From: Epiperipatus broadwayi
Lineage: Eukaryota > Animalia > Onychophora
DNA: 64,000 nt
Direction of reading: 5' to 3'
Assembly: GCA_028023455.1 (NCBI GenBank)
Contig: JAQFVV010000007.1
Coordinates: 18,228,001 to 18,292,000 of the forward strand
The number at the start of each line of letters is the position of its first letter. Position 1 is the first letter of the stretch. Of the stretch, positions 1,498 through 64,000 are shown in pieces. Below the pieces are notes generated by a model that did not search any database, was not told the origin of the DNA, and saw only the letters and a list, made by a program, of their open reading frames with translations. Both the position numbers and the translations under genes were made by a program.

Positions 1498-2793
1498 TAT
1501 ATATATATATTGTATATGTAATTATTTTTTTAAAGTGTTGTTTTCTTTTTCTTCATTAATTTTGGGTATCGTGAATAAAAAAATATATATATATATATAT
1601 TTTTTTAAATGTATTTAAAGGTCGAATACAAGATTTATTAATAGTGGCAAATAACATGCACACAATGATGGATCTGGGTTAAGTGTAATGGTTTACTATC
1701 AACACAGGTGCAACCTGTATACTGTTATAAATGTTAAAACTACATACCATTATAAATGGAAATCCGTCATACATTATAAATAGTGCACCAACTTAGGTTC
1801 AAACTATTAACTGTTATAATGTATATAATTAAAGAAACTCTTATTCAAATTAAATGCACTAAAAAGTAAAAAATAAATTTTCTTCCATTTTCACAGTGTT
1901 TTTGATATTATGTAACTAAAAATAAGTCATGGGATGCTTATGTTTAGAAACTGTTTAACATATATTTACAAGTTATACGTAAGTTATCATTTCATGATTT
2001 ATTCTTCTTGAGGTTATTAAAAATAAGTACTTAGAGGTTTTGCTTTAAAAAGTAAACTAATATCAAATTTATTATCATGAATATTTAAATAGAATGACTT
2101 TTATTGTTTCAAGTCTGAATTTATCACACGACTCTAACATAATTCCAACATACACATTGCTGTTTGAGGAGCAAGCTTTAGTAAATAATAGATGTCAAAT
2201 AATAGAGCTTAATAAATTTCTAAACTAGTGTCTAGTTTATGGAATTTATCAGTGAGGAGCTTTGTAACTTGGAAAAAGGCATTTGGGCCTTTAGGATCTA
2301 ATGCACATTCTTTCTGGAAGCCATAATTTACTCCTCTGTGATGTTAAGCTAAGATGAAAAGCATATGAATGTTTTCAATCTAAGCCAACATACTCATATA
2401 GTCATATAGATTTGAAACTATTTAGTATTTACATATTATAGTGTTGTTAATCTTTTAGCAACTATGGACATCTATATCCTGTGGCTTGGATTAGTATGAA
2501 ACCAATGAAGTGTCACATGACACTATCACATGACTCCAGCATACACATTAATGTTTCAGTAGCATACATTTTTTTAACTATTAGTTACTAAAGCTTCCAT
2601 TAGATGGCATAGCAGAGTTGAAAGAAAAAATGATGTTAAACCACTAAACATCATATGACCACCATCCCTTATGCTAGCACATAACTGTTATTAAACAGGC
2701 AAAACTCTCCATACAGTAGTGTCAACCAGAGTAATCAATGGATGCCAGAGGGCTTGTGCATAAAATTCCCATCTAGTGCTTACTCATCCAATA

Positions 2794-2835
2794 TCCCCAG
2801 ACTAGTTTCTGGCCTGTGGCCTTCATCAGTGAGGA
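2794..2835 (-). ncRNA. Minimal type-I hammerhead ribozyme, family B (best copy)
   Basis: Minus strand: TCCTCA CTGATGA A GGCC ACA GGCC A GAAA CTAG TC/TGGGGA. Stem I TCCTCA:TGGGGA, stem II GGCC:GGCC, palindromic stem III ACTAGT, GUC triplet with predicted cut between 2800 and 2799. Confidence 0.8.
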
Positions 2836-3529
2836 GCCTTGGATCTGAGAGCACTACATCTAGATCTTAGGATCCAATGCAACCTTCCAGCAGCCACCTT
2901 TTATTTCTAATTAACTACAAAACTATGAGAATGAAATTGAAAATACACAAATGTTTTCAATCTAAGCTAAATAGCTTATATAGTCATATGGGTCTGAACT
3001 CAATTCGGCACCCATACATTTTGCTGTCTTTGGCTCTTTAACAACCATAGCCACCACTATCCTATTAGGCAGGATTGGTGTTAAACCATTAAACATCACA
3101 TGATCACCATCTCTTATGCTAGCACATAACTGTTATTAAACAGGCAAAACTCCATACAGTAGTGGCATCCATTGATTACTCTTGTTGGCACAGGGTGATA
3201 CTACTGTATGAAGAGTTTTACATATTTAATAACAGTTATGTGCTAGCATAAGAGATGTTGATCATGTGATGTTTAGTGGTTTAACATCAATCCTGCCTAA
3301 TAGGATAGTGGTGGCTATGGTTATTAAAGAACCAAAGACACCAAAATGTATGGGTGCTGAATTGAGTTCAGACCCATATGACTATATAAGCTATTGAGCT
3401 TAGATTTAAAATATTTGTATGTTTTCAATTTCATTCTCATAGTTTTGTAGTTAAGTAGAGATAACAGATGGCTGCTGGAGGGTTGCATTGGATTTTAAGA
3501 TCTAGGTGCAGTGCTCTCAGATCCAAGGT

Positions 3530-3571
3530 TCCTCACTGACAAAGACCACATGCCAGAAACTAGTCTGGGGA
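3530..3571 (+). ncRNA. Degenerate hammerhead, family B
   Basis: TCCTCA CTGACAA AGACCACATGCCA GAAA CTAGTC TGGGGA. The CUGAUGA box is mutated, so it is probably inactive. Confidence 0.6.
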
Positions 3572-5040
3572 TATCAGATGAGTAGGCACTAGATACGGAT
3601 TTTATGCACAAGCCTTCTGGCATCCATTGATTACTCTGATTAGCACAGGGTGGCACTACTGTATGGAGAGTTTTGCCTGTTTAAAAAATAATGTCTGAAT
3701 TTGTTTTTATATATACATATAAGATTTAGTAGGTAACCCAAGAGATATTTTTTTGGTGGCAAAAAAATAATTTGGCCATTAACACTTCTGAAATTTTACC
3801 ACGCTCTTTTTGTGAAGGGTATTTTGCATGATCTGGTATTTATTAAAACTACATTATCATATGTATAATATTTATAACCTTATAATCTATCACCAGGTTT
3901 TTGGAATATTACAAGTACATATATTGCTAATATTAAACCATAAATGCACATAAATAATTGGTTATCATATGTTAATCGCATAACCCCAGCCAATGCTAAA
4001 AATTACTCAATAGAATATCATCAATCTATTATCAGAGCAACACTCAGACAAAATTTTCATTTATTATTTCTGTGTTATCATGACAATAGATTACTGATAT
4101 TCTTCAGGTTAATTTTAAGTATTGGCTGGGTGGTTTAGAGAAGCATTAATGGTGAGAGAACTGGGTTGCATTGTAAGAACCTTGATCTCTAGAGCATACC
4201 TCTGCACTAATCCATTCAAGGAATTAAAAAATAAATGCAAACTCATATCAACAAATAGCAATTATTTTAATATTAATTATATACTACATCCAAGTAGAAG
4301 TACCTGTTACTATGTTGTTTCAACCTGCATTGGAGACAAAAACTTAACACATCTTGTAAATTCAGTTTATAGTAACTCATCTTTAATTCTTGATCTTATT
4401 TGTGTTATTGCATAATCAAGAAAAAATCTATTTCAATACTTTAAATATTAGAATTTTTTTCTTTTAACTAAAAAATAGTGTATCTGTTTGTCCACATTAG
4501 TAGGTGATGCCAGTTTAAAATTGACTTCTGGCCTTTATAGAAATGACATTCACTACCTTAGTATAATCTATTATCTACTTAATTTATCAGGCTGTTCAGT
4601 ACAACAATTATTATAATGATCATAAAGCCTACCTATCTTATTGCTAGTCATAGATCAATTTTACTACTAGCCAAAGAGGCAAATCTTAAATCAAGATCTT
4701 CTTTCTGAATATTCAATCAAGGAACTTTTCAATTCACTGAAAAATAATGGCATAAAAATATGTTTTGTGTGTGGCACCAACCAAATTTCATGTCCCATAT
4801 TCAATATTAAAATTAGCTGGATTAAATCTTTCTAAACATTATTGAAGCCTAGTAAGCAAATAGAGAAAGCACTCATGGTTACTATGATATAATAAATCAA
4901 AATATAAATTGAAACAAATGTTTTTAATGAAAGAATTGATTTTTAGATGATTAGCACTGTTTTTAATTAGCTTTAAATAAATTATTTAATTCATTAAAAT
5001 CAGTTGAATTCTGTGTTTATTTTTAAATATCACTTTTGTT

Positions 5041-6800: not shown

Positions 6801-7021
6801 ATCATCATCATCATTATCAACCATTATCAATCCACTGCAGGATGGTCTCTCCAAGTTCAATCCATGTTCTCTGATCTTTAATTTCTCTTCCCCATATCAC
6901 CTCTGCACCCTTTCTTATTTCATCCATCCATCTCACATGTGGTTTCTTTTTGGGTCTTTTACAATCTCTTAGAATCCGGTTTAAGATTTCAATTGTCCAT
7001 ATATTATCATCTCTTCTAGAG
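6801..7021 (-). mobile_element. RTE-clade LINE 3' end fragment
   Basis: Reverse complement carries the same 3' end as 34700-34900 and 47462-47660, ending ATCCTGCAGTGGATTGATAATGGTTGATAATGATGATG. Confidence 0.8.
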
Positions 7022-7544
7022 ATTCATAATACAATCTAATAAAACAAAAGCAAACTGATTGTTTGTGCTTTAAGTCAAAGTTCAAATCCTAATTTAGTGT
7101 CCACTTCTTTTATTTTTCTTATGAAATCACTTCAGTAAAACCATCTTCAAAAATAATCAATATTTTTTATTATTTTTTATCAAAGTAAAAATACTATTTA
7201 CATTTTTCTTTTACATTAGTAATAAGATATAACATATTTTGTAATAAAGATTCAATTTTAATTACTAAGACCCTAAGACTAATCTGCCCAGCAATGTTTC
7301 CCTATAATAATTGGTGTTGTTTGCAATTAATTATGCAATTTCTTTTTTTATTATATAAAGATTGATAATCTTGAATTAAAATAATTTCACAACTACAAAT
7401 ATCTTGGTCAGATTATCAATGCAGATTAGAGTATAATGGATGAAATTAATAATAGAATTAAACCAGGATGCAGTATTTTTGGCAGTAATAACTTAGTATT
7501 TTAAGGAAATGTATTTGAATAAATTTTTTTTAATTAATAATGTG

Positions 7545-13714: not shown

Positions 13715-14440
13715 TTGTCACTACACCACTCGACTGGTTTCTATTTAATTTTAACACCTAGTGGAGGATGTAATCATAAACATATTACCAAAGCCATGTG
13801 AAAATATCTATGATCCCCAAGATGTATATTTTGTGTCAGTTGGCTCAGACTTCAAGCTCTTACACATATCTTTATTACTGTTCAGTATATATATATACAA
13901 ACCATTATACAATTACAAATATCCAGTAACGCCCTCTGTTTAAAGATCTATATCTCAATAATAGCAAACCTTAAAATGATCTGCTATTATTGAGATATAG
14001 ATCTTTAAACAGAGGGCGTTACTGGATATTTGTAATTGTATAATGGTTTGTATATTTTCTATAATTATTTCAATTAGTGTTAACAGTAACTTTCTTTTCA
14101 TATATATATAGCAAATTACTACAGTTTATTTGATGTCAAACCTGCTGTCCTCACAACTTTGACACAAATCACTTAATGAAAGAATATTAACAATTTTTAT
14201 TAGTCATTCATTGGACTAGAAATTATCCAATAATGAATAATATTTCTGTAGTGTAATTTTCACTACACCTCTTTCACACAATGTAGGAACTGGTTTCTAT
14301 CCACTTTTAACACTTTGTAGAGGAATGAAATCATAAACATATGACCAAAGACGTGAAAAAAATATATGATTCCCAAGATACACCATTTGTGCTAAACCAG
14401 CACTCATCAGTTGGCCCAGACCACAATCTCTTACACATAT
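13715..14440 (-). repeat. Tandem HHR-A2 monomers (about 350-365 nt after removing an insertion)
   Basis: ACTGGTTTCTAT anchors at 13733 and 14289. The hammerhead core is deleted at about 13830 and degenerate at 14368-14430 (CTGATGA-GTGCTGGTTTAGCAC-AAA). Confidence 0.75.
13893..14055. repeat. Perfect 74-bp inverted repeat with 15-nt spacer (MITE or fold-back)
   Basis: 13893-13966 is the exact reverse complement of 13982-14055; spacer AACCTTAAAATGATC. It lies in the TA tract of an HHR-A2 monomer. Confidence 0.95.
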
Positions 14441-14944
14441 TCAATTTTTGGCAGAAGCTTTCAGTTATGTTTTCACACCCCTCCTAATTCCAGTAGATTA
14501 ATTAACAACACAAAGGACCAATTAATGCCCTCTCAAACACCGCAAGCAGTCTATAATATTATATGCCCTCACAGGAATTGCAAATCTTCATATTATGGGG
14601 AGACCAAGGCATCATTAGAAACTAGACTGCCCCAGCACAAATACTTATATACCAAGGCACAATCAAATTCCGTATATAATTCCATCTTCATGCAGCACCA
14701 AAAAAATGTGGGACATCCATGTGAACTGCAGACAATCAGCTTGGTTTGCAGGGAAGCAAATGATGTAAAACGCAAAGTGAAAGAAGCCTGCTATATCACA
14801 ATGGACTGCAGTGCCATCAACCAAAAGAATCATGTTACTCTGTATCCAAGAAATGGAATGCTTAAAAGTTGCATATATTTGCATATAATTAAACTAACAG
14901 CCATAATAAATAAGAGCTATGAATATGAAAGCCATGTCTCTTGA
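14440..14944 (+). mobile_element. Penelope-like retroelement 3' fragment, GIY-YIG (Uri) endonuclease domain
   Basis: KDQLMPSQTPQAVYNIICPHRNCKSSYYGETKASLETRLPQH...H...GH...REANDVKRKVKEACYI fits the Penelope VY-x-I-x-C...YIGET...R...EH pattern. The fragment is flanked by TTACACAT at 14431 and 14974. Confidence 0.85.
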
Positions 14945-15047
14945 AAGTGCTCAGTGTATGATTTAATAAAATATTACACATCTTTAGCTTTGCAGTTATT
15001 GCATTTTTAGCGCTATATTGATTTACCATAGTTCAATATATATATAT

Positions 15048-17319
15048 TATACCGGCTGCCCCGCTCTTCCCTTGCACCGTTTCCCTAAAAGGGATTGTGG
15101 GCTCCAAAACAAACATGATACAGCATAAAGATTTATTTATTTTTTCTTATATCAATAGTTGTTCATTATCAACACAAGAGGGCGCCAGATACGATGATTT
15201 GATTCATAATTTAATTTCTCGCATCACCTTACGTCATATCAAAACGATTTTGAAGTCTAATCCCTGCCCATAAGCTCAAACTCCCAGCATGGACCAATAG
15301 GGGTCACTCAGGGTCGCGATATGATGGCCTTCAAGACTATTATTCTGGCAAATGACACAATATTAACCAATGGATAAGAAGATCGGTTGATTGACATATC
15401 GGTCCAAGCATTGGACGGGATCATTGGTTATTTATAACTAATACGAATGTTCGGTTGAGGCATCATTAGAATAAACAACTAGACGCTTATAACATCATCC
15501 CCCTTTATCATACAATCCAATAGAATTATTTATACTAGCTCTATTGACATTTACTTATATTTATTAATAATAGGCCCTCCCAACTCTTAAACCTATGTTA
15601 ACTACATAATAAGTAAACATCGTGACTTACGGCACGATGTTTATGAATGAAATTTAAAAGAGATAAAAAAAAAAAAAAAATATAAGAAAGACAAATTTAA
15701 AAGTAAAATAATTAATTGCATGAATAAATGCTAACAATAATAATAACTTCAAAAAAAATATATATATATTTAATTATAGAAAATGATTTGAGGAATGCTC
15801 GACTAGTTTAAATCAAAAAAAAAAATTTATTGATTATAAAAAAATGAAACATTGATTAATAGCTTTATTTGCACGCACATACGCGCATTCTCGCACTCGC
15901 ACAGAAAAGAACATATTATGCATAATAAACATGGCTGATAAAATATATTTCCTCTTTTACATTTTGAAAGTAGGTGTGTGTTATAATTTATCTGCGAAAG
16001 AAAATAATAATTAGGATCAAAGTTCATAACTGGAAAAGTCCTAAGATTTAAATATGATGGACTATGTAGCATCTGATATTTTTATTTATGAAAGTTGAGA
16101 TTAAAATAATAAGATTTAATATATGAGAGATTACGGATCATTTTATATTTGTTTTACGAAAGGTCAAATTTAATTAATTATGAGATTGCCTTTTAAATTT
16201 ACGTAAAGAATGAATGGAAGTATTATAAAAAAAAATGTTTACCTAGGATTTTGCTTAGTCTTCTGCTGCTTCTAATTTGGTGAGGGTTCGAACCTGAGGG
16301 ATGATGTTTCCATAATACATGGTTATTCATTTCACATAAGTTCAGCGTAGTATGTTTGGACGATTCTTGTATATTAAACGGAACAGCGTCCTTAGACTGA
16401 TTGGAGCACTATGTTCGGACGGTATTGTTGTTGATCATTCATAGCTGTGGAGATGTTCTGGCGGCGGAGCGTCGATCAATCACTGAAGGGTTTTCTAGCC
16501 CATCATGACGATCGACGCTCTAAATGTTAATTTCACAGTGATCATATTGGATAAACCGGATAGCAAAAAAAAAAGAAAAGTTCTAGTTGTAGCTTCCGGA
16601 GGAATTTAAAAAAACTATAAGCATAAGCAAAACAAAACAAAGAATGTAAAAAGACCTTTTCTTTAGATTTAGATTCATATTTATATGGGTTGGTTATTAT
16701 CTGAGGATCGAATCTCCACCCAGAGTTCAATATTCTTTGAGTTGTCGTTGGGGTCCGTGTCCTACGTAATGTCCACTCAATCCATATGCTTGAGGCAATC
16801 TTAGGTTTATGCAATCTCATATTACAATCTCAGTTAGAAAAATTCATACTTATTCACACCTTTTATGCATACATGTGTGCGTGTTTTAAGAGAACAATTT
16901 AACTTACATTAGTTTAAAAGTCGAGCATTTAATCTGTCTCCAAATCACTTCTATAAGCTTTTAACTTTCACTACAGTTATAATCTAAAACAAAACCCTTT
17001 TTAATTACCCCCACGGCATATACAAGGAGAAATCACTTATTGAGATTTAAAATGGCATATTAGTAGTATTTTATATTTTACTTTTTCTTTCTTTTTAGAG
17101 AATATTATTATAATAGGTTGTATGAAAGCCTTAATTATTTAATCAGAAATATTAGCATTTTATTTTACAGTGTATTTTATAACGCATTGAAAGAAAACTA
17201 CATTTATTTTTTATTATTTTTTTTATCATAAGTTGAAAGTGAAAGAAGAGAAAAAATATAGCATGTTTACATTGCTCGTGTGTGTGCGTATATACCTGTA
17301 CCGACTTTGTCTCGGTACA
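15048..17319 (-). repeat. 3' LTR (2272 bp)
   Basis: Direct repeat of 19892-22162, roughly 98-99% identical by eye, mostly transitions. Minus-strand termini TGTACCG...CGGTATA. Confidence 0.92.
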
Positions 17320-17334
17320 TATCCCCGCGATCCG
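17320..17334 (-). promoter_or_regulatory. Candidate polypurine tract (plus-strand primer)
   Basis: Minus strand CGGATCGCGGGGATA directly abuts the 3' LTR start TGTACC. It is short and imperfect. Confidence 0.45.
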
Positions 17335-18314
17335 TCTAAAATTAAAATGAGAGGCTTGGCATTTTAATTTTCACCATAAAATTCCTTATTTTTGACCCCG
17401 CTTCGTGTGATTTTTAATCATTTATTTTAGCCGACTATCCTACAGTTCAACTCCCCCTCATATAAAGAAACGAAGTGGCAGGTCATGTGGTCAGGCTCGG
17501 ATTGACACTTGACGTTTGCGAACTAAACTCAAAAAAAAAAATTCTTCTCTTCTTTTTTTTTTCCTCCTTTTTTTTTCTTTACGAAGAGCGGGCGTGCCAT
17601 AATTGGAGATATCTTGCCCAGTCTGGTACAGGCACCCCGGGTGGAAGGTTGGCATGGGGATGGACCTTTCCGAAGTCCCGCGATGCAAGGTTACGAACAT
17701 ATAGGCATTCTCTTACGGTCTATCTAATGGAAGGCAGGAGGATGGTCATTTCCGAAGTCCCCTCTGCAAAATACGACAACATTTACGAGGTAGCGAATAA
17801 TCTGAGTTATAGAACCATAAGCATTCAAAATATCCGAGCTCTGTACCTCCTAGCACAATAGGAAATATTGAGGGAAGGAACAATAATAGCGCACTCTCGT
17901 GATCCGGCTTTTCTTTCTTTCTTTAGGCGGCATCCGCTTCCTTTCTCCGCGTGTTTTCGAGCAACATATATTTTAGTCGAAGGCGGCGACGTTCTCTTCT
18001 TTAACTTATTTACCTCGAATAGTTTTCTTTAGAAGAGTTATGACATTTATTCCTTTTCTTTCTTTAAATTATATTTTTTTTTTCTTTTTTTTTTTTTTTT
18101 CGTGTTTAGTTATCTGCGGTCTGCTTTGGTTTAAAATAATGTTTTATCAACCCCCCTTCCCCCCTTGTTATTGTATGATGCGATGCGATGTGTAAGTCCT
18201 TTCTGGTCCGAGGTCATTTTCCTTCAGTTACCGTTGTTTTATAAAGCGTGCTCCGGTAATCGTATTCCTGTGGCAAATCCGTGTTCGTCAACGTGTTTTT
18301 AGACTAATTTTTCA

Positions 18315-19511
18315 TCAGTATCGATCTGGTGGTAGCTTTCTTCTATATGGTTCATGTCCCGGCCTCTCTATATGCCTTTCCCGTCCTTCCGCTCGCTCGA
18401 ACTTGGCTATGGCATCCCCCATCTTGTGGATGCCCCCGTCATCCCTGCTTAGCATCATCTGCCTGATGTCTGTTGGCATGTTGTGTCTAATGGTCGAGAT
18501 GATTTGCTCCTCCATCATGTGATACGCTGGTAGCTGCTGGAGGCCGGCCACCTGCCTGTAATAGAACTGCGTTATCGTCTCGTTAGGTTTGAGCCCGTAT
18601 TTTTCATTGGTGATGTGAAAGTAGATCCCCTCTTGTCTGGTAGCATTCCAAAAGCTTCGTAGGATCTCTTCTCGATATTCTACGAACGATCTGGGCTTAA
18701 ACTCGATCGTTCGCCACCAATCTCTAGCTGGCCCTTGCAGGTATGTGCTGGCAATATTGATTTTGTCTGGCTCCGGCTTTGAGGGCTCAGAAAACAGGTT
18801 CTGGGCGCTCTCCACGTGGTCCATCGGACTCTCGTTTTCACCTGCCCTGAAGATCTCAATTTTTATTTGCCTTTCGGCCCACGACTGGCTCGGTTCCCGC
18901 AGGTTTATTCTCAGTTCAAATTTCTTTTCCAACTCCTCCAGACGTTTGGCCATAATTTCTCTCGGTACGTTTTGTTGTGGCTCGATTCCTTCTACCTTTC
19001 TATTTATCGCGTCCACCTTTTGTCTTACGTCTTCCAACTCTGCCTTTGCTGTTATCACTTCAGTCTTCGTTTCTTCTATTTCGGCTTTTGCTGCACCGAT
19101 CTCTATTTTTATTGAGGTAATCTCCGTCTTTACTTCGTCAATCTTTATTTCTTCCTCTTTGCTCTGGTCCTCCTCTGACTCTCCTGTGTTTCCCTTCAAT
19201 AATTTTCGTATCTCCCTAATGAATTCCCCTCTCTCCTCCTTTCTCTCTTTCCTTCTTTCTTCTTCTCTGTCCTCTTCTCTCTTCCTTCTTTCTTCTTCTC
19301 TGTCCTCTTCCCTTTTCCTTCTTTCTTCTTCTCTGTACTCTTCTCTCTTCCTTCTTTCTTCCCTATCTTCCCTCATCTCTATCATCATTTGGCTCATCAT
19401 TTTAAGAAGCATTTTTATTTCTGATTCAGCCTCTTCTTTAACATCTATCTTTTTGAACGTTATAGGGCTCTCCCCTGTCTCCTCCCACGCAGTATCGTTA
19501 TTGCTGTCCAT
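18315..19511 (-). CDS. gag: Gag, 398 aa: N-terminal E/R/K helix and coiled coil, then a retrotransposon (Arc-like) capsid domain; no CCHC knuckle
   Basis: Intact ORF ending in two consecutive TGA codons. KINIASTYLQGPARDWW...FVEYREEILRSFW...ETITQFYYR resembles the Ty3/Gypsy capsid major homology region. Confidence 0.88.
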   Translation of the reverse strand: MDSNNDTAWEETGESPITFKKIDVKEEAESEIKMLLKMMSQMMIEMREDREERRKREEYREEERRKREEDREEERRKREEDREEERRKERKEERGEFIREIRKLLKGNTGESEEDQSKEEEIKIDEVKTEITSIKIEIGAAKAEIEETKTEVITAKAELEDVRQKVDAINRKVEGIEPQQNVPREIMAKRLEELEKKFELRINLREPSQSWAERQIKIEIFRAGENESPMDHVESAQNLFSEPSKPEPDKINIASTYLQGPARDWWRTIEFKPRSFVEYREEILRSFWNATRQEGIYFHITNEKYGLKPNETITQFYYRQVAGLQQLPAYHMMEEQIISTIRHNMPTDIRQMMLSRDDGGIHKMGDAIAKFERAEGRERHIERPGHEPYRRKLPPDRY

Positions 19512-19867
19512 TTATGATTTTAAAAAAAAATTTTTTTCTTTTTTTTTCCCTTTTTTTCTTTTTTATGATAAGAAGTGATTAATCGACGTCCGCGCCCCCA
19601 TCTCCCGCTATGTTTTTTTTTTTTTATTTATTTCGTTCCGGCTCCAAGTGTTTTATTAAAAGATTTGCGATATTGTGAATCGCTGTATTTTGTTCCGTTT
19701 GTTATTTTCCTTTTCTCCCTTTTCCTTCCCTTTCTATTCGTCCAAACTTTCGTTTACGTGAAAAAAAAAAAATTTCCCTCCTCTTTTCAGTTTTGCGTCT
19801 TTCACGAGGTTCGGCCGCTTTTGGCTAATGTCTTGATTTGCTTCTCTCCGAAACATTATTTATATTA

Positions 19868-19888
19868 GCCTCACGTTTGGAAGCGCCA
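19868..19888 (-). promoter_or_regulatory. Primer-binding site, tRNA-Lys-like
   Basis: Minus strand TGGCGCTTCCAAACGTGAGGC, 3 nt after the 5' LTR. It resembles the complement of the tRNA-Lys(CUU) 3' end (TGGCGCCCAACGTGGGGC) with small insertions. Confidence 0.7.
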
Positions 19889-19891
19889 TTT

Positions 19892-22162
19892 TATACCGGT
19901 TGCCCCGCTCTTCCCTTGCACCGTCTCCCTAAAAGGGATTGTGAGCTCCAAAACAAACATGATACAGCGTAAAGATTTATTTATTTTTCTTATATCAATA
20001 GTTGTTCATTATCAACACAAGAGGGCGCCAGATACAATGATTTGATTCATAATTTAATTTCTCGCATCACCTTATGTCATATCAAAACGATTTTGAAGTC
20101 TAATCCCTGCCCATAAGCTCAAACTCCCAGCATGGACCAATAGGGGTCACTCAGGGTCGCGATGTGATTGCCTTCAAGACTATTATTCTGGCAAATGACA
20201 CAATATTAACCAATGGATAAGAAGGTCGGTTGATTAACAGATCGGTCCAAGCATTGGATGGGATCATTGGTTATTTATAACTAATACGAATGTTCGGTTG
20301 AGGCATCATTAGAATAAACAACTAGACGCTTATAACATCATCCCCCTTTATCATACAATCCAATAGAATTATTTATACTAGCTCTATTGACATTTCTTAT
20401 ATTTATTAAAATAGGCCCTCCCAACTCTTAAACCTATGTTAACTACATAATAAGTAAACATCGTGACTTACGGCACGATGTTTATGAATGAAATTTAAAA
20501 GAGATAAAAAAAAAAAAAAAATATAAGAAAGACAAATTTAAAAGTAAAATAATTAATTGCATGAATAAATGCTAACAATAATAATAACTTCAAAAAAATA
20601 TATATATATTTAATTATAGAAAATGATTTGAGGAATGCTCGACTAGTTTAGATAAATAAAAAAAATTTATTGATTATAAAAAAATGAAACATTGATTAAT
20701 AGTTTTATTTGCACGCACATATGCGCATTCTCGCACTCGCACAGAAAAGAACATATTATGCATAATAAACATGGCTGATAAAATATATTTCCTCTTTTAC
20801 ATTTTGAAAGTAGGTGTGTGTTATAATTTATCTGCGAAAGAAAATAATAATTAGGATCAAAGTTCATAACTGGAAAAGTCCTAAGATTTAAATATGATGG
20901 ACTATGTAGCATCTGATATTTTTATTTACGAAAGTTGAGATTAAAATAATAAGATTTAATATATGAGAGATTACGGATCATTTTATATTTGTTTTACGAA
21001 AGGTCGAATTTAATTAATTATGAGATTGCCTTTTAAATTTACGTAAAGAATGAATGGAAGTATTATAAAAAAAAATGTTTACCTAGGATTTTGCTTAGTC
21101 TTCTGCTGCTTCTAATTTGGTGAGGGTTCAAACCTGAGGGATGATGTTTCCATAATACATGGTTATTCATTTCACATAAGTTCAGCGTAGTATGTTTGGA
21201 CGATTCTTGTATATTAAACGGAACAGCGTCCTTAGACTGATTGGAGCACTATGTTCGGACGGTATTGTTGTTGATCATTCATAGCTGTGGAGATGTTCTG
21301 GTGGCGGAGCGTCGGTCAATCACTGAAGGGTTTTCTAGCCCATCATGACGATCGACGCTCTAAATGTTAATTTCACAGTGATCATATTGGATAAACCGGA
21401 TAGCAAAAAAAAAAAAGAAAAGTTCTAGTTGTAGCTTCCGGAGGAATTTAAAAAAACTATAAGCATAAGCAAAACAAAACAAAGAATGTAAAAAGATCTT
21501 TTCTTTAGATTTAGATTCATATTTATATGGGTTGGTTATTATCTGAGGATCGAATCTCCACCCAGAGTTCAATATTCTTTGAGTTGTCGTTGGGGTCCGT
21601 GTCCTACGTAATGTCCACTCAATCCATATGCTTGAGGCAATCTTAGGTTTATGCAATCTCATATTACAATCTCAGTTAGAAAAATTTCATACTTATTCAC
21701 ACCTTTTATGCATACATGTGTGCATGTTTTAAGAGAACAATTTAACTTACATTAGTTTAAAAGTCGAGCATTTAATCTGTCTCCAAATCACTTCTATAAG
21801 CTTTTAACTTTCACTACAGTTATAATCTAAAACAAAACCCCTTTTAATTACCCCCGCGGCATATACAAGGAGAAATCACTTATTGCGATTTAAAATGGCA
21901 TATTAGTAGTATTTTATATTTTACTTTTTCTTTCTTTTTAGAGAATATTATTATAATAGGTTGTATGAAAGCCTTAATTATTTAATCAGAAATATTAGCA
22001 TTTTATTTTACAGTGTATTTTATAACGCATTGAAAGAAAACTACATTTATTTTTTATTATTTTTTTTATCATAAGTTGAAAGTGAAAGAAGAGAAAAAAT
22101 ATAGCGTGTTTACATTGCGCTGGTGTGTGCGTATATACCTGTACCGACTTTGTCTCGGTACA
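19892..22162 (-). repeat. 5' LTR (2271 bp)
   Basis: Direct repeat of 15048-17319, followed on the minus strand by the PBS. Confidence 0.92.
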
Positions 22163-22310
22163 ATATATATAGCAAATTAGTAAAGCATAATAAATGTGTC
22201 AACTATGCTGCTCTCACAATTTAGAGACAAATCACTTAATGAAAGAATATTAATAATTTTTTTTATTAGTCATTCACTAGACTAGATTAAATAATTGAAT
22301 AGTTTATTTC
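22163..22310. repeat. Remainder of the HHR-A2 monomer split by the LTR element
   Basis: ATATATAGCAAATT...CAAATCACTTAATGAAAGAATATTAA...TTAGTCATTCA matches 14101-14220; the left half is at about 14974-15047. Confidence 0.75.
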
Positions 22311-28869: not shown

Positions 28870-29090
28870 TTAATAAGTTAGTTCCTGAATTGAACCCCCA
28901 TGTTAGACATCTGCAGAAATATCAATACAAGAAGTTCTTCAACATCTATGAGGGACTTTACAGGATTGAGAAAAAGGTTGGAGAGAATGCTTATATGATT
29001 GGTATACCAGATGGACTGAAAGGGACATACAGTGCTTAAAGCCTCAGGCCGATGTATCATGAAGGGCCAGCATCACTTTAACTCAAACCT
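28870..29090 (+). mobile_element. Ty3/Gypsy integrase C-terminal fragment (GPY/F module)
   Basis: KKFFNIYEGLYRIEKKVGENAYMI...GTYSA*SLRP resembles GPY-x-I...NAY-x-L...LRP. Confidence 0.65.
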
Positions 29091-37737: not shown

Positions 37738-40700
37738 CTAGGAAGACAAGAATGGATGGTAGCTATAGTGTATATAGCTACTGGAGATAGTCAAACTATA
37801 ATGGAGTGGAACAGTAGCATATATGAATGCCTAGTTAAGGATATACAGAGTTTCAAAGAAAAGAGAAAGAGAATAATGGTTATAGGAGATATGAATGGGC
37901 ATATTGAAGAAATTGATGATGTAGGTGATAAGAATGGGCAACCTTTGAAGAATTTTTGTCAGAGTAAATTTGAGCATTGAAAATGTATCAAATATTTATG
38001 AGCAACAATACACATGATCTAGAAATAATATATTCCACACAATATATTATGTATTAGTAGAGAAAGAGGGAATGAATAAAGTACAGAAAATTAAGGGGTT
38101 TGATAATAAAGAGAGAGTATATAATAGTGATTATAACTTCTTTATAATAGAAATGGTTAGTAATGTGATGGAAAATAGAAATAAAAGTAGAAATGATAGT
38201 GAAAGATGTGGATGGAGGGTGAATGATAAGAATAAGTTAGAAGAGTATAAAATAAAAGTTGAAGAAACCATGGAAGAGTTGGTTGGGGATAAATATAAGG
38301 ACCGGTCTGGTGTAATAGAAAATGTGGCAAATATGGTTTTAGGTGAGAATATTCAGAAGAATAAAAGTAATAAAAAAGTGAGAGTTAGTAAAAGTGTAAA
38401 AGAGAGGAAAAAGCATGCAAAGAATATATGTGTGCTATTAAGAACAAAGAAAATGAAAAGGATGTTAATGTTAAATGAGAAAAGTACTTAGAAAAAAAGA
38501 AGTTGGCTAAGATAGATAATTAGAGAGAGAATGAAATTGAATAGTCAATTGTTGGAGGATATTAATAATAGTGGAAGAGATGAAAAAAATTTTTTGGAAA
38601 TACATTAAAAGAAGGAATGTATGAGAGAGAGAGAGAGAGATAGTATTACTAGATTATGATGGAGTAGAGAGTAGCTCTAGAGAAGAATTAGAGATGATAT
38701 TAAATAAGTATGTAATGGATATAGAAAAGATGTTAGATGTGAAGGACAGAGTGATAGCAAACATGAAAGCATGTAGTAATGGGAATATAGGTTTACAGAA
38801 ATTGAACTGAATGAGGCAGGGAATAAATTAAAAAGTGGAAAGGCAAGAGGTTTAGATGGATGAGCAGCAAAGATGGTAATGAATTCAGGGCATAGGGCAA
38901 AAGTAAAATTATTATTGTGTTTTAATCAACTAGCACAGAAAGAGAGTTTTTCCTGGTAGTTGGAGTAATACAAGAGTAAGGCTACTATTTAAAGGAAAGG
39001 ATCAGGATCATAGGAAGTTAAACAATTATGGACTGATAGCGGTAACATCAGTTTTATATAAAGTTTTTTTGATATGATGGCTGGAAGAGTTGCAAAATGG
39101 ATGGAATAGGAGATAGTTTATTTGTTGTTACACAACTTATGGATAGTTTATTTGTTGTTACACAACTTATGGATATGAGTAGGTATACAGGTAGATAGTT
39201 ATATATGGTTTTTATAGATATAGAAAAGGCATATGATAGAGTAAATAGAAATAGATTATGGATAAGTTTAATAAATTTGAGAATGGATGGAGCTTTAGTG
39301 GATATTATTAAGAAATTATATGAAAATAATTATTATATGTATTAATTAGTGAATATAGAATCAGTTAAAGTTAAAAATGGGTGGGACTAAGGTAAGGATA
39401 TCCTCTGTCACCTATTTTGTTTTGTTGTATTTGAGAGAAATAGAGACAGCAATAGAAAGATTAGGAAGAGGGATAGAGATACCATTAATAGGCAGCAAGG
39501 GACTATGTACATTATCTGGTCTTATTTGCAGATGATGTCTTTTTGTATGCAAAAAGAAGGGAAGATATGGAAGTTATGCTGAGGACATGCAGAAGAATAG
39601 GTAAAGAAATGGGGATTAAGTTTAGTGAAGAAAAATCAAAAGTAATGATGTTTAATTCTGGGGAAAGAGAAGACAGAGAATTTTTATTGGGGAATGTAAA
39701 GTTAAGTGCAGTGAATAGATATAACTATTTGGGAATCATCTTAATTAATCAGAAAAATTGGTTGGATACATGGGGAAAAAAAAGATAAATGAAGCAAAGA
39801 AAAGAAAGGGATTGATAAAGAAATTAACAGTGTTTTCATATAATAAATATGACGTAGCTAGAACTGTTTGGAAGGGAATGGTGGTAGCAGGGTTAATGAT
39901 ACATTATGTGCTAGTAAAGGGCTATTAGATTACTTGGAAAAAGTACAAAGAGAAGTAGGAAGACATGCACAGCAAAAGAGGCAATTCAAGGAAAAATGGG
40001 ATGGTCAAGTTTTTATATGAGGGATGTAAAAAGCAAAATGAAAATATTCGGTAGATTGCAGTTTATGAATAATAAAAGAATAGCCAAAATTGTATTTAAT
40101 TGGGTTATGAATAAAGGGCAGGTAATAAGATGGGTGAGGAAGGTAATGTGATATGCAGAAGATTTGGATAAAGAATACTTGTACAAAAGTATATTTGTAC
40201 AAAAGGTGGGATGATTGTGTTAGGAAAATTGTTCAGTGTTGTAGTGGTAAGGAATAGGATAGAAGAATAGATGCATTAATAAAGAATAGAGAGTTGGAGA
40301 GATAGAAAACTAGTATGGAGAGTAAAAGAGTTTATGGAATATTAGGTGCAAGTTAATTTATGATAATAGCAAGGAAAGTAGTTTACTGTTTAAGGCTCGA
40401 ACGGGATCTTTAGCAACAGGGGATTATACACGTAAGTGGAAAAACGTGGGTGATTTAGTCTGCAAGTTGTGTAAGGAAGGCATAGAAAATATTAGGCATT
40501 TGTTTATTAAATGTAAATGTTTGAAAGCAGAAAGGATTCAAATAATAAAGTTATGGAAGAATAAATATAAAGAAAGTGATTATACAGAAAGTGGGTTATT
40601 GATTTTTATGCTGGGTTTGGGGAAAAGGAGTTAGATATGAAGGCCATGGAGTTGACAAAGATTATGTTGTGGAAATGGAATTGAGCAGGATATGAGAAAA

Positions 40701-47461: not shown

Positions 47462-48365
47462 ATCATCAACCATTATCAGTCCACTGCAGGATGAAGATCC
47501 TCCCAAGTTCAATCCATCTTCTCTGATCTTTAGTTTTTCTTCTTTACATCACCCCTGCACACTTTCTTATTTTATCCATCCATCTCACATGTGGGTTCTT
47601 TCTGGGTCTTTTACAATCTCGTAGAATCTAGTTTAAGATTTCAATTGTCCATCTATTATGATCTCTTCTATCAATATGTCCAATCCAACTCCACTTCAGT
47701 CTTTTAATTTTTTCATTGAGGTCAGTAACACCTCTTTGTTAACTTACCCATATATTGCATTTTCGATCTCTTGTTATTCCCAACATGTATCTCTCCATAC
47801 TTCCTTGAGTGGTTTGAAGTCTTTGTATTGCTCTTCTATTAAGTATCCAAGTCTCAAATCCATAAGTAAGAACTAGTAAAATACATTTATTAAAAACTTT
47901 CCTTTTCAAATACATAGGCACATTTCCTTTTAGTATCAAGTTATTTTTACCAAAAGCACTCCAACCAAGTTTAATTCTATGATTAATTTCATCCATTATG
48001 TTCCCATCTGTATTAATAATCTGATTAAGATATTTGTAGCTGTTAACTTCTTCTAACTCATCATAATCAATCTTTATTTTTATATTTTGAGAAAATCCAT
48101 TAAACATTACTTTAGTCTTTTTAACATTTATCTTTAGTCCTACTTTCATCTGATAACTCCTGCAACATTTCCTGCAGCTCTAAAGCATTGTTTGCAAAAA
48201 CAACTACATCATCTGCAAAATCTAAATGACTTAAATAATCTCTATTTACTTTCACTCCTTTAGCTTTCTATTTTAATCCTTAAAATACTTCTTGCAGTAC
48301 TGCTGTAAAAAGTTTTGGAGATATGGAGTCACCCTGTCTTATATACCCTTCTCAATGTTGACGTT
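47462..48365 (-). mobile_element. RTE-clade LINE, RT to 3' end
   Basis: GDSISPKLF, HLDFADDVV, GLKINVKKTKVM, LTYGFETW, with a (TGA)n tail at 47462. Confidence 0.9.
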
Positions 48366-62978: not shown

Positions 62979-64000
62979 GATAAATGAAGCAAAGAAAAGA
63001 AAGGGACTGATAAAAAAATTAATAGTGTTTCATATAAAAATATGATGTAGCTAGAATTATATGGTAGCGGCAGTAGCAGGGTTAACATATGGTAAAGATA
63101 CATTATGTGTTAGTAAAGGAAGGTTAGATTACTTAGAAAAAGTACAAAAAGAAGTAAAAAGACATGCATTAGATGCAGATGTAAGGACAACAAAGGATGC
63201 AATTCAAGGAGAGATGGGATGCCAAATTTTTATATGAGATGCAAAATGAAAATGTTCAGTAGATTGCAATTTATGGATAATAAGAGAATAGCCAAAACAG
63301 TATCTAATTGGGTTATGAATAAAGGGCAGGCAACAAGATGGATGAGAAAGGTAGTATGGTATGCAAAAGATTTGGATAAAAAAATTTTGTCAGTATACTT
63401 ATACAAAAGGTGGAATGATTGTGTTAGGAGAATTGTTGGGGATTGTAGTGGCAAGGAATGTAATAGAAAAATAGATGCATTAATAAAAAATAGGGAGGTG
63501 GAGAGATGGAGAACTAGTATGGAAAGTAAAAATAGTTTAACTATACTGTATATAGAATTAAACAGAATATTGGTGCAAGTTAATTTATGATAATAGCAAT
63601 GAAAGTAGTTTACTGTTTAAGGCTCTATCAGGATCTTTAGTAACAAGGGAATATACACATAAATGTAAAAATATGGGTGATATTTAGTCTGCAAGTTATG
63701 TAGGGAAGGCATAGAAAATATTAGGCATATGTTAATTGAATGTAAATGCCTGAAAGCAGAAAGGGTACAGATAATGAAGTTGTGGAAGAATAAATATGAA
63801 CAAAGTGATTATACAGAAAGTGAGTTCTTGGTTTTTATATTGGGTTTTGGAAAAGATAAGGGTGATTTAGATATAAAGGCCATAAAATTGACAAAGATTG
63901 TTATGGAAATGGGATGGAGCAGGGTAGAGAAGAATATGGGAAAAACTTTAGAATGGGGAATGGAAAGGGAAGGTAAGGTGGCTAACAGATTTCTCTGGGC
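62979..64000 (+). mobile_element. 5'-truncated copy of the APE-RT LINE, running off the window end
   Basis: Aligns to 39785-40755, including the C-terminal CKLC...H...C region. Confidence 0.9.

What the first reader, a model, noticed from the sequence alone, without database searches (positions are those of the whole stretch)
15048..22162. Gag-only LTR retroelement with 2.27-kb LTRs in an animal genome
Seen: LTRs make up 64% of the 7115-bp element; TSD, PBS and PPT-like site are present; the gag ORF is intact; there is no trace of pol in the 1-kb 3' internal region; LTRs differ by only about 1-2%. Established: gag-only terminal-repeat retrotransposons (TR-GAG) are described from plants, and animal Gypsy LTRs are usually a few hundred bp. 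Inference: a recently mobile non-autonomous family that supplies its own capsid and borrows Pol, or a capsid-forming RNA-transfer module comparable to Arc.
Basis: partly seen in the sequence, partly recalled or inferred. Interest (0 to 1): 0.75.

Follow-up and report, generated by a model that had tools for sequence, protein, structure and literature searches.

The report
Gag-only Ty3/gypsy LTR retrotransposon copy
This is a real 7.1-kb retrotransposon copy with two 2.27-kb terminal repeats that still encodes an intact capsid (Gag) protein but no replication enzymes, so it needs another element's enzymes to move. It is a fairly ordinary kind of defective mobile element, and I could not check whether it belongs to a family.

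Summary
Two direct repeats, 15048-17319 and 19892-22162 (2272 and 2271 bp, K2P 0.0138), bracket a 2572-bp internal region, and the element lies on the minus strand. Its only gene is a 398-aa ORF (18315-19511, minus). The protein has a long N-terminal coiled coil followed by a two-lobed retroviral capsid domain of the Ty3/gypsy/Arc type. That assignment rests on a profile match to Arc (E 3e-14) and Foldseek matches to dArc, PNMA2 and Ty3 capsids. The protein has no cysteine, hence no zinc knuckle. No protease, RT, RNase H or integrase remnant was found. The 995 bp after gag carry 15-19 stops per frame and must already have been non-coding at insertion.

Caveats:
- The ATAT target-site duplication lies inside an (AT)n tract and proves little.
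- The PPT is weak.
- The PBS could not be assigned to a tRNA.
- The host was not identified; 'animal' is plausible but unproven.
- The intact ORF is not evidence of selection (chance of at least 0.12).

No other copy or helper was found in the window or in any searchable collection. The choice between a gag-only family and a one-off deletion derivative therefore stays open. There is no evidence for an Arc-like host function. Long LTRs have an animal precedent (Ulysses, 2 kb). Interest is modest.

The parts
22163..22166 (.). Upstream copy (in element orientation) of the putative ATAT target-site duplication, inside an (AT)n run
   Evidence: The flank reads ATATATAG, so 4 bp or 6 bp both fit. 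Weak evidence.
19892..22162 (-). 5' LTR, 2271 bp, 31% GC. It begins TGTACCGAGACAAAGTCGGTACA (an 8-bp palindromic stem) and ends CCGGTATA.
19868..19888 (-). PBS-like site TGGCGCTTCCAAACGTGAGGC, 3 nt after the 5' LTR on the same strand as gag; tRNA not identified
   Evidence: Sequence read. No tRNA in the window and no Rfam match.
19512..19891 (-). 380-nt A-rich untranslated leader
   Evidence: 4-8 stops per frame
18315..19511 (-). gag ORF: 398 aa plus a TGA TGA stop, no cysteine, pI 5.35
18987..19439 (-). N-terminal coiled-coil region of Gag (residues 25-175; two long helices, 25-106 and 114-175)
   Evidence: AlphaFold2 model; mixed-charge composition
19237..19361 (-). In-frame 33-bp tandem repeat, 3.8 copies, encoding the REEDREEERRK units of the coiled coil
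18369..18827 (-). Two-lobed capsid (CA) domain of Gag, residues 229-381, of the Ty3/gypsy/Arc type
   Evidence: Pfam Retrotrans_gag E 5e-4, below the family cutoff. Family profile against PDB Arc E 3.4e-14. pLDDT 90-98 over this domain. Foldseek matches to dArc1/2, Arc, PNMA2 and Ty3 capsids.
17320..18314 (-). 995-bp non-coding 3' internal region with A-rich tracts and no pol or env remnant
17321..17329 (-). Weak PPT-like GCGGGGAT(A) just upstream of the 3' LTR
   Evidence: Sequence read. Only five contiguous purines.
15048..17319 (-). 3' LTR, 2272 bp
15044..15047 (.). Downstream copy of the putative ATAT target-site duplication, at the end of an (AT)6 run

Best explanation
This is a non-autonomous derivative of a Ty3/gypsy (Metaviridae-type) LTR retrotransposon, inserted in minus orientation into an (AT)n tract. 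It keeps the cis elements for retrotransposition: two 2.27-kb LTRs, a PBS-like site and a weak PPT. It keeps one gene, gag, whose product is a coiled coil followed by a two-lobed capsid domain. That protein has no zinc-knuckle nucleocapsid and only a 17-residue basic tail. Protease, RT, RNase H and integrase are gone.

Inferred mechanism: RNA is transcribed from the 5' LTR and translated into Gag. It is then packaged into particles that also contain the Gag-Pol or Pol of a related autonomous element, reverse-transcribed there, and integrated with a short AT-rich duplication.

Shown: the anatomy, the capsid fold, the absence of pol, and that the 3' internal kilobase was already non-coding when this copy inserted.

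Inferred: that the gag-only layout predates this insertion, that a helper exists, and that this Gag takes part in particle assembly.
For: LTR pair with K2P 0.0138. TGG-initiated PBS-like site on the same strand as gag and next to the 5' LTR. Gag homology: 64 distant relatives in 1.84 billion representatives, best E 3.9e-8, among them gag-PR-RT-RH-IN polyproteins P0046 and P0051. Family profile against Arc capsid E 3.4e-14. AlphaFold2 model with mean pLDDT 81.5 and 90-98 over CA. Foldseek top hits dArc1/2, Arc, PNMA2 and Ty3 capsids. No pol by tblastn or Pfam. The 3' internal region has 15-19 stops per frame, while only about 7 substitutions per kb are expected since insertion, so it was non-coding at insertion. 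The internal region is 34-46% GC against 31% in the LTRs and 27-28% in the flanks.
Against: Only one copy is available, with no solo LTR, second copy or helper in the window or in any searchable collection. The duplication sits in a microsatellite, the PPT is weak, and the PBS is unassigned. An intact gag is compatible with chance (at least 0.12). Distant relatives carry a basic tail after CA with a median length of 76 residues, whereas this Gag has 17. The ORF may therefore be 3'-truncated by the same deletion that removed pol, which fits a one-off deletion as well as a family founder. A Gag with no nucleocapsid-like part may not package RNA.
Confidence: 0.6

Rival explanations
1. One-off internal deletion. 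An autonomous gag-pol element inserted here, and pol (plus the 3' end of gag) was lost afterwards by illegitimate recombination. On this reading the gag-only layout never transposed.
For: The Gag tail after CA is 17 aa against a median of 76 aa in relatives, as expected if a breakpoint lies at the 3' end of gag. No second gag-only copy is known. Intactness of gag carries no weight.
Against: The deletion would have to start within a few codons of a usable double stop. It would also have to leave 995 bp of sequence that was already non-coding at insertion, an unusually long 3' untranslated region for a Ty3/gypsy parent. No partial PR or IN remnant flanks a breakpoint.
Confidence: 0.25
2. Product of an aberrant template. 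This copy was made by reverse transcription of a spliced or recombinant RNA of an autonomous element (gag exon joined to the 3' end), a sporadic event rather than a propagating family.
For: The layout keeps both ends and gag only. A-rich tracts at 18074-18100 and 17553-17576 could mark junctions.
Against: No parent sequence is available for locating donor and acceptor sites, so nothing here specifically points to splicing.
Confidence: 0.08
3. Domesticated, Arc-like capsid gene that transfers RNA between cells for the host.
For: The capsid domain is closest in sequence profile and fold to Arc, dArc and PNMA2. Like Arc, it has an N-terminal coiled coil and no zinc knuckle.
Against: The gene lies between 98.6%-identical LTRs with a PBS-like site, so it is a young transposon copy. 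Coiled coil plus CA without CCHC is also the rule among its transposon relatives. There are no orthologues or close relatives at all.
Confidence: 0.03
4. Not a retroelement boundary at all: a 4.84-kb segmental tandem duplication (1.47 units) that happens to contain a gag gene.
For: LTR-internal-LTR and a partial tandem duplication look geometrically alike. The duplication, PPT and PBS are each individually weak.
Against: The repeat ends carry a TG start and a 6/7 terminal inverted repeat. The TGG site follows the upstream repeat on the gag strand. gag is oriented correctly between them.
Confidence: 0.02

Closest known systems
TR-GAG elements of plants (Chaparro et al. 2015, PMC4350172)
   Same: LTR retroelement with typical ends whose single ORF encodes Gag only, and which therefore depends on pol supplied in trans.
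   Different: TR-GAGs are defined as shorter than 4 kb, whereas this element is 7.1 kb because of its 2.27-kb LTRs (the internal part is 2.57 kb). TR-GAGs are described from plants and a brown alga, and the authors' HMM scan found none in Drosophila melanogaster. The host here is unidentified (probably an invertebrate). TR-GAGs are multi-copy families with evidence of activity; here there is a single copy.
LARD / TRIM and other ORF-less non-autonomous LTR elements of animals (Culex cqUNK families, PMC3286476; ant PbTRIM, PMC3532108)
   Same: Non-autonomous LTR elements with highly similar LTRs, PBS and PPT and no recognisable master copy.
   Different: Those elements have no coding capacity. 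This one keeps a complete capsid gene.
Ulysses of Drosophila virilis (PMC3136932)
   Same: Animal Ty3/gypsy-type element with LTRs of about 2 kb.
   Different: Ulysses is described with two ORFs (PMC3136932); its autonomy is from my own knowledge.
Arc / dArc1 / dArc2 / PNMA2 (domesticated Ty3/gypsy Gag proteins)
   Same: The same two-lobed CA fold. Arc also has an N-terminal coiled coil and lacks a zinc knuckle.
   Different: Those are LTR-less host genes conserved between species. This gene is inside a young LTR element and is under 25% identical to them.
HeT-A of Drosophila telomeres (gag-only retroelement that relies on RT from another element; own knowledge, with context in PMC6581046)
   Same: An animal retroelement that encodes Gag only and borrows reverse transcriptase.
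   Different: HeT-A is a non-LTR (LINE-like) element with a telomeric role. There is no structural relation.

Membership tests
LTR retrotransposon (structural definition) | Two long direct terminal repeats of high identity | tested here: met
   2272 and 2271 bp, 98.6% identical
LTR retrotransposon (structural definition) | TG...CA termini / short terminal inverted repeats | tested here: inconclusive
   The LTR begins TGTACCG and ends CGGTATA: TG...TA, inverted repeat 6/7
LTR retrotransposon (structural definition) | Target-site duplication of 4-6 bp | tested here: inconclusive
   ATAT on both sides, but inside an (AT)n run
LTR retrotransposon (structural definition) | PBS complementary to a host tRNA 3' end next to the 5' LTR | tested here: inconclusive
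   TGGCGCTTCCAA... lies 3 nt after the LTR. No host tRNA was available.
LTR retrotransposon (structural definition) | Polypurine tract next to the 3' LTR | tested here: inconclusive
   Only GCGGGGATA
Ty3/gypsy (Metaviridae) lineage | Gag with the retroviral-type two-lobed capsid domain related to Ty3/Arc | tested here: met
   Distant relatives include PR-RT-RH-IN polyproteins.
Ty3/gypsy (Metaviridae) lineage | pol with domain order PR-RT-RNaseH-IN and RT phylogeny | tested here: not met
   No pol is present. Assignment rests on gag alone, so it is filed as a derivative and not as a typical member.
TR-GAG | Single ORF encoding Gag between LTRs, no pol | tested here: met
TR-GAG | Short element (<4 kb) | tested here: not met
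   7115 bp. Definition from PMC4350172.
TR-GAG | Multi-copy family with signs of recent activity | not testable with these tools
Domesticated Gag gene (Arc-like) | Loss of LTRs; fixed host locus conserved between species | tested here: not met
   Flanked by 98.6%-identical LTRs. No close relatives anywhere.

The most novel reading that the evidence does not exclude
This copy represents a propagating gag-only LTR family in an invertebrate animal, a TR-GAG-type parasite of an autonomous Ty3/gypsy element. Its nucleocapsid-less Gag would be kept by selection, either to co-assemble with the helper's Gag-Pol or to compete with it. Its 2.27-kb LTRs would carry added regulatory cargo. That layout has been formally described only in plants and a brown alga.
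Probability: 0.2. Interest if true: 0.5.

Novelty: new member of a known kind. Interest (0 to 1): 0.3.

Why it matters
If gag-only LTR elements form active families in animals as they do in plants, they would be a tractable case of a parasite of a parasite. In such a case the non-autonomous partner contributes a structural protein, which raises questions about capsid co-assembly, helper specificity and interference. As it stands, this is one well-preserved defective copy. Its value is as an annotation (a divergent Ty3/gypsy-type Gag with long LTRs) and as a query for a genome-wide search.

Tried and rejected
- Word search with the CA half of Gag returned nothing, and the exact-sequence look-up returned nothing.
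- I searched for copies with the Gag protein in metagenome, viral and prokaryote-genome contigs. I also searched with exact LTR-start and LTR-end/PBS patterns. All were empty.
- Host identification through a LINE RT fragment gave only three unnamed hits of 48-64% identity. This also shows that the host's proteins are not in the big collection. The lack of close Gag relatives therefore says nothing about copy number.
- The listing of cluster members on the top ten Gag hits gave no organism names.
- Rfam found no tRNA-like match at the PBS and no hammerhead or other family in the window. A retrozyme-type element is therefore not supported.
- Pfam, NCBIfam and PDB searches on the LTR ORFs (81 and 92 aa) and on the neighbouring 177-aa ORF found nothing.
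- I looked for a continuation of Gag in other frames after the stop and found none.
- I considered using the intact ORF as evidence of selection and rejected it after the calculation.
- I do not take the window for human: it is 25-35% GC in all but one 2-kb bin, the one holding gag, with invertebrate-looking repeats.
Full report
**Observation**

Repeat finding and alignment confirm two direct repeats, 15048-17319 (2272 bp) and 19892-22162 (2271 bp).
- 2236 of 2267 aligned positions are identical: 23 transitions and 8 transversions, K2P 0.0138.
- There are 6-7 indels of 1-2 bp, several of them in or next to A/T runs.
- The element spans 15048-22162 (7115 bp), and the LTRs make up 63.9% of it.

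The only long ORF with homology is 18315-19511 on the minus strand (398 aa), so the element is minus-oriented. The 5' LTR is 19892-22162 and the 3' LTR is 15048-17319. On that strand each LTR begins TGTACCGAGACAAAGTCGGTACA and ends CCGGTATA. That is TG...TA, with a 6/7 terminal inverted repeat.

Three nucleotides after the 5' LTR comes TGGCGCTTCCAAACGTGAGGC, a PBS-like site on the same strand as gag. I could not assign it to a tRNA: the window has no tRNA gene, and Rfam sees nothing there.

The sequence before the 3' LTR is GCGGGGATA, a weak polypurine tract.

ATAT flanks both ends, but the insertion lies in an (AT)n run. The duplication is therefore compatible with a 4-bp or a 6-bp TSD and proves little on its own. 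From my own knowledge, some insect gypsy-group integrases (17.6, 297) prefer ATAT targets, so the AT-repeat target may reflect a preference. This is a lead, not a test.

**The protein**

Pfam gives only a sub-threshold Retrotrans_gag match (E 5e-4). phmmer against PDB gives Arc at E 1.4e-3.

Family scans and the word search left the protein open, and the claim concerns relatives, so I ran the full HMMER search with the C-terminal 199 residues.
- It returned 64 hits at E<=1e-3, best 3.9e-8, and none below 1e-10. Identities were 17-31% (24% for the best hit).
- Most hits are proteins of 270-560 aa with an N-terminal extension and no CCHC motif.
- Two long hits (P0046, P0051) have PR-RT-RNaseH-IN after the gag-like part, which is the Ty3/gypsy domain order.

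A profile of Gag plus 44 hits (A1) matches the mammalian Arc capsid domain across both lobes at E 3.4e-14, and dArc1 at 3.5e-4.

The AlphaFold2 model has mean pLDDT 81.5, with 90-98 over residues 220-370. It shows two long helices (25-106 and 114-175) and a nine-helix domain (229-381).

Foldseek places the model with dArc1/2, Arc, PNMA2 and Ty3 capsids (TM to target 0.44-0.66). In the viral library it matches retroviral and metaviral Gag and caulimovirid coat proteins.

Gag has no cysteine, is acidic overall (pI 5.35), and has only a 17-residue basic tail after CA. Relatives have tails with a median length of 76 residues, mostly basic. This Gag either belongs to a short-tailed lineage or lost its 3' end.

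**No pol**

- tblastn of all 68 retrieved proteins, including the two polyproteins, finds nothing in the element outside gag.
- Sense-strand ORF pieces of 17320-18314 and the small LTR ORFs have no Pfam match.
- The three sense frames of the 995-bp 3' region carry 15-19 stops, against about 22 for shuffled sequence.
- Nothing continues Gag in another frame.

Only about 0.7% divergence per copy has accumulated since insertion (half of K2P 0.0138). This kilobase was therefore already non-coding when the copy inserted.

**What it is and how it works**

The best reading is a non-autonomous derivative of a Ty3/gypsy-type LTR retrotransposon that keeps its cis signals and its capsid gene and must be reverse-transcribed and integrated by enzymes from an autonomous relative.
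- The anatomy, the capsid fold and the lack of pol are shown.
- Mobilisation in trans, the existence of a helper, and any role of this Gag in particles are inferred.

Age: K/2µ with K = 0.0138 gives roughly 0.4 Myr at the rate often used for Drosophila TEs (0.016 per site per Myr; own knowledge). At 2-3e-9 per year it gives 2-3.5 Myr. The host is unknown, so this is only a range.

**Family or one-off?**

- The window holds no other copy or solo LTR.
- Scans of metagenome, viral and prokaryote-genome contigs with the protein and with LTR/PBS patterns were empty.

A control shows how little the protein databases say here. A LINE RT fragment that is repeated within the window has no near-identical hit either; its best is 64%. 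The host genome's ORFs are therefore not in the collection.

The intact ORF is not evidence of selection. With the observed LTR substitution and indel rates, the chance that gag stayed open is about 0.12. The true chance is higher, because LTR indels tend to sit in homopolymer runs and gag has none of 6 or longer.

The short Gag tail fits a deletion breakpoint at the 3' end of gag. This fits a family founder and a one-off event equally well.

I put about 0.6 on 'transposed in the gag-only form', 0.25 on post-insertion deletion, and the rest on the minor rivals.

**Comparison with known systems**

- The layout works like plant TR-GAG elements (PMC4350172). It fails their size criterion (<4 kb), and their multi-copy criterion is untested. 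That paper's HMM scan found no TR-GAG in D. melanogaster.
- ORF-less non-autonomous LTR elements are known in animals (Culex, PMC3286476; ant TRIM, PMC3532108).
- LTRs of about 2 kb occur in Ulysses of D. virilis (PMC3136932), so the LTR length is unusual but has a precedent.
- The similarity to Arc reflects common Ty3/gypsy capsid ancestry. The flanking young LTRs argue against domestication.

**Host**

The host was not identified. The window is 25-35% GC apart from the 2-kb bin that holds gag, at 41%, and is rich in repeats. These include a LINE-like RT fragment and, by eye, a Penelope-like GIY-YIG ORF. This suggests an invertebrate animal. I do not take it for human.

**Verdict**

This is a real, well-preserved gag-only LTR element: a new member of a known kind. 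Interest is modest (0.3) unless a genome-wide search shows a propagating family.

Noticed in passing
window 14411-14944 (+): A 177-aa ORF lies about 100 bp from the element's 3' LTR. By eye it carries a GIY-YIG-like motif (VYNIIC...YYGET...R..QHKY), as in the endonuclease of Penelope-like elements. Pfam, NCBIfam and PDB phmmer find nothing.
   Followed up: partly
window 2719-3152 and 3213-3646: Large inverted repeat with 434-nt arms, 91% complementary, 60 nt apart. It may be a foldback or head-to-head transposon pair.
   Followed up: no
window 47739-48149 (-), with diverged copies at 6807-7018 and 7355-7512: A LINE-type RT C-terminal fragment, repeated in the window at 80-82% identity. The big protein collection holds only 48-64% identical unnamed relatives, which suggests the host genome is not represented there.
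   Followed up: partly
window 28896-29051 (+): A short stretch with one stop codon resembles the C-terminus (residues 1511-1563) of the Ty3/gypsy polyprotein P0051 (tblastn E 1.9e-4). It is probably a decayed fragment of a different LTR element.
   Followed up: no
window 38001-40625 and 63219-63854: A strongly purine-skewed region (GC skew 0.6). A repeat family is shared between 40024-40625 and 63232-63854 at 83-85% identity. The ORFs 38072-38491 and 63219-63590 have no significant Pfam match.
   Followed up: partly
window 15048-17319 vs 19892-22162: Eight of the 31 LTR-LTR differences touch a CpG, and transitions outnumber transversions 23:8. This is a possible sign of cytosine methylation in the host.
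   Followed up: no
window 22140-22162 (-) and 17297-17319 (-): Each LTR starts with a perfect 8-bp palindrome, TGTACCGA-(7 nt)-TCGGTACA. The same TACCG core recurs at the LTR's 3' end. It may be a repeated integrase-binding motif.
   Followed up: no
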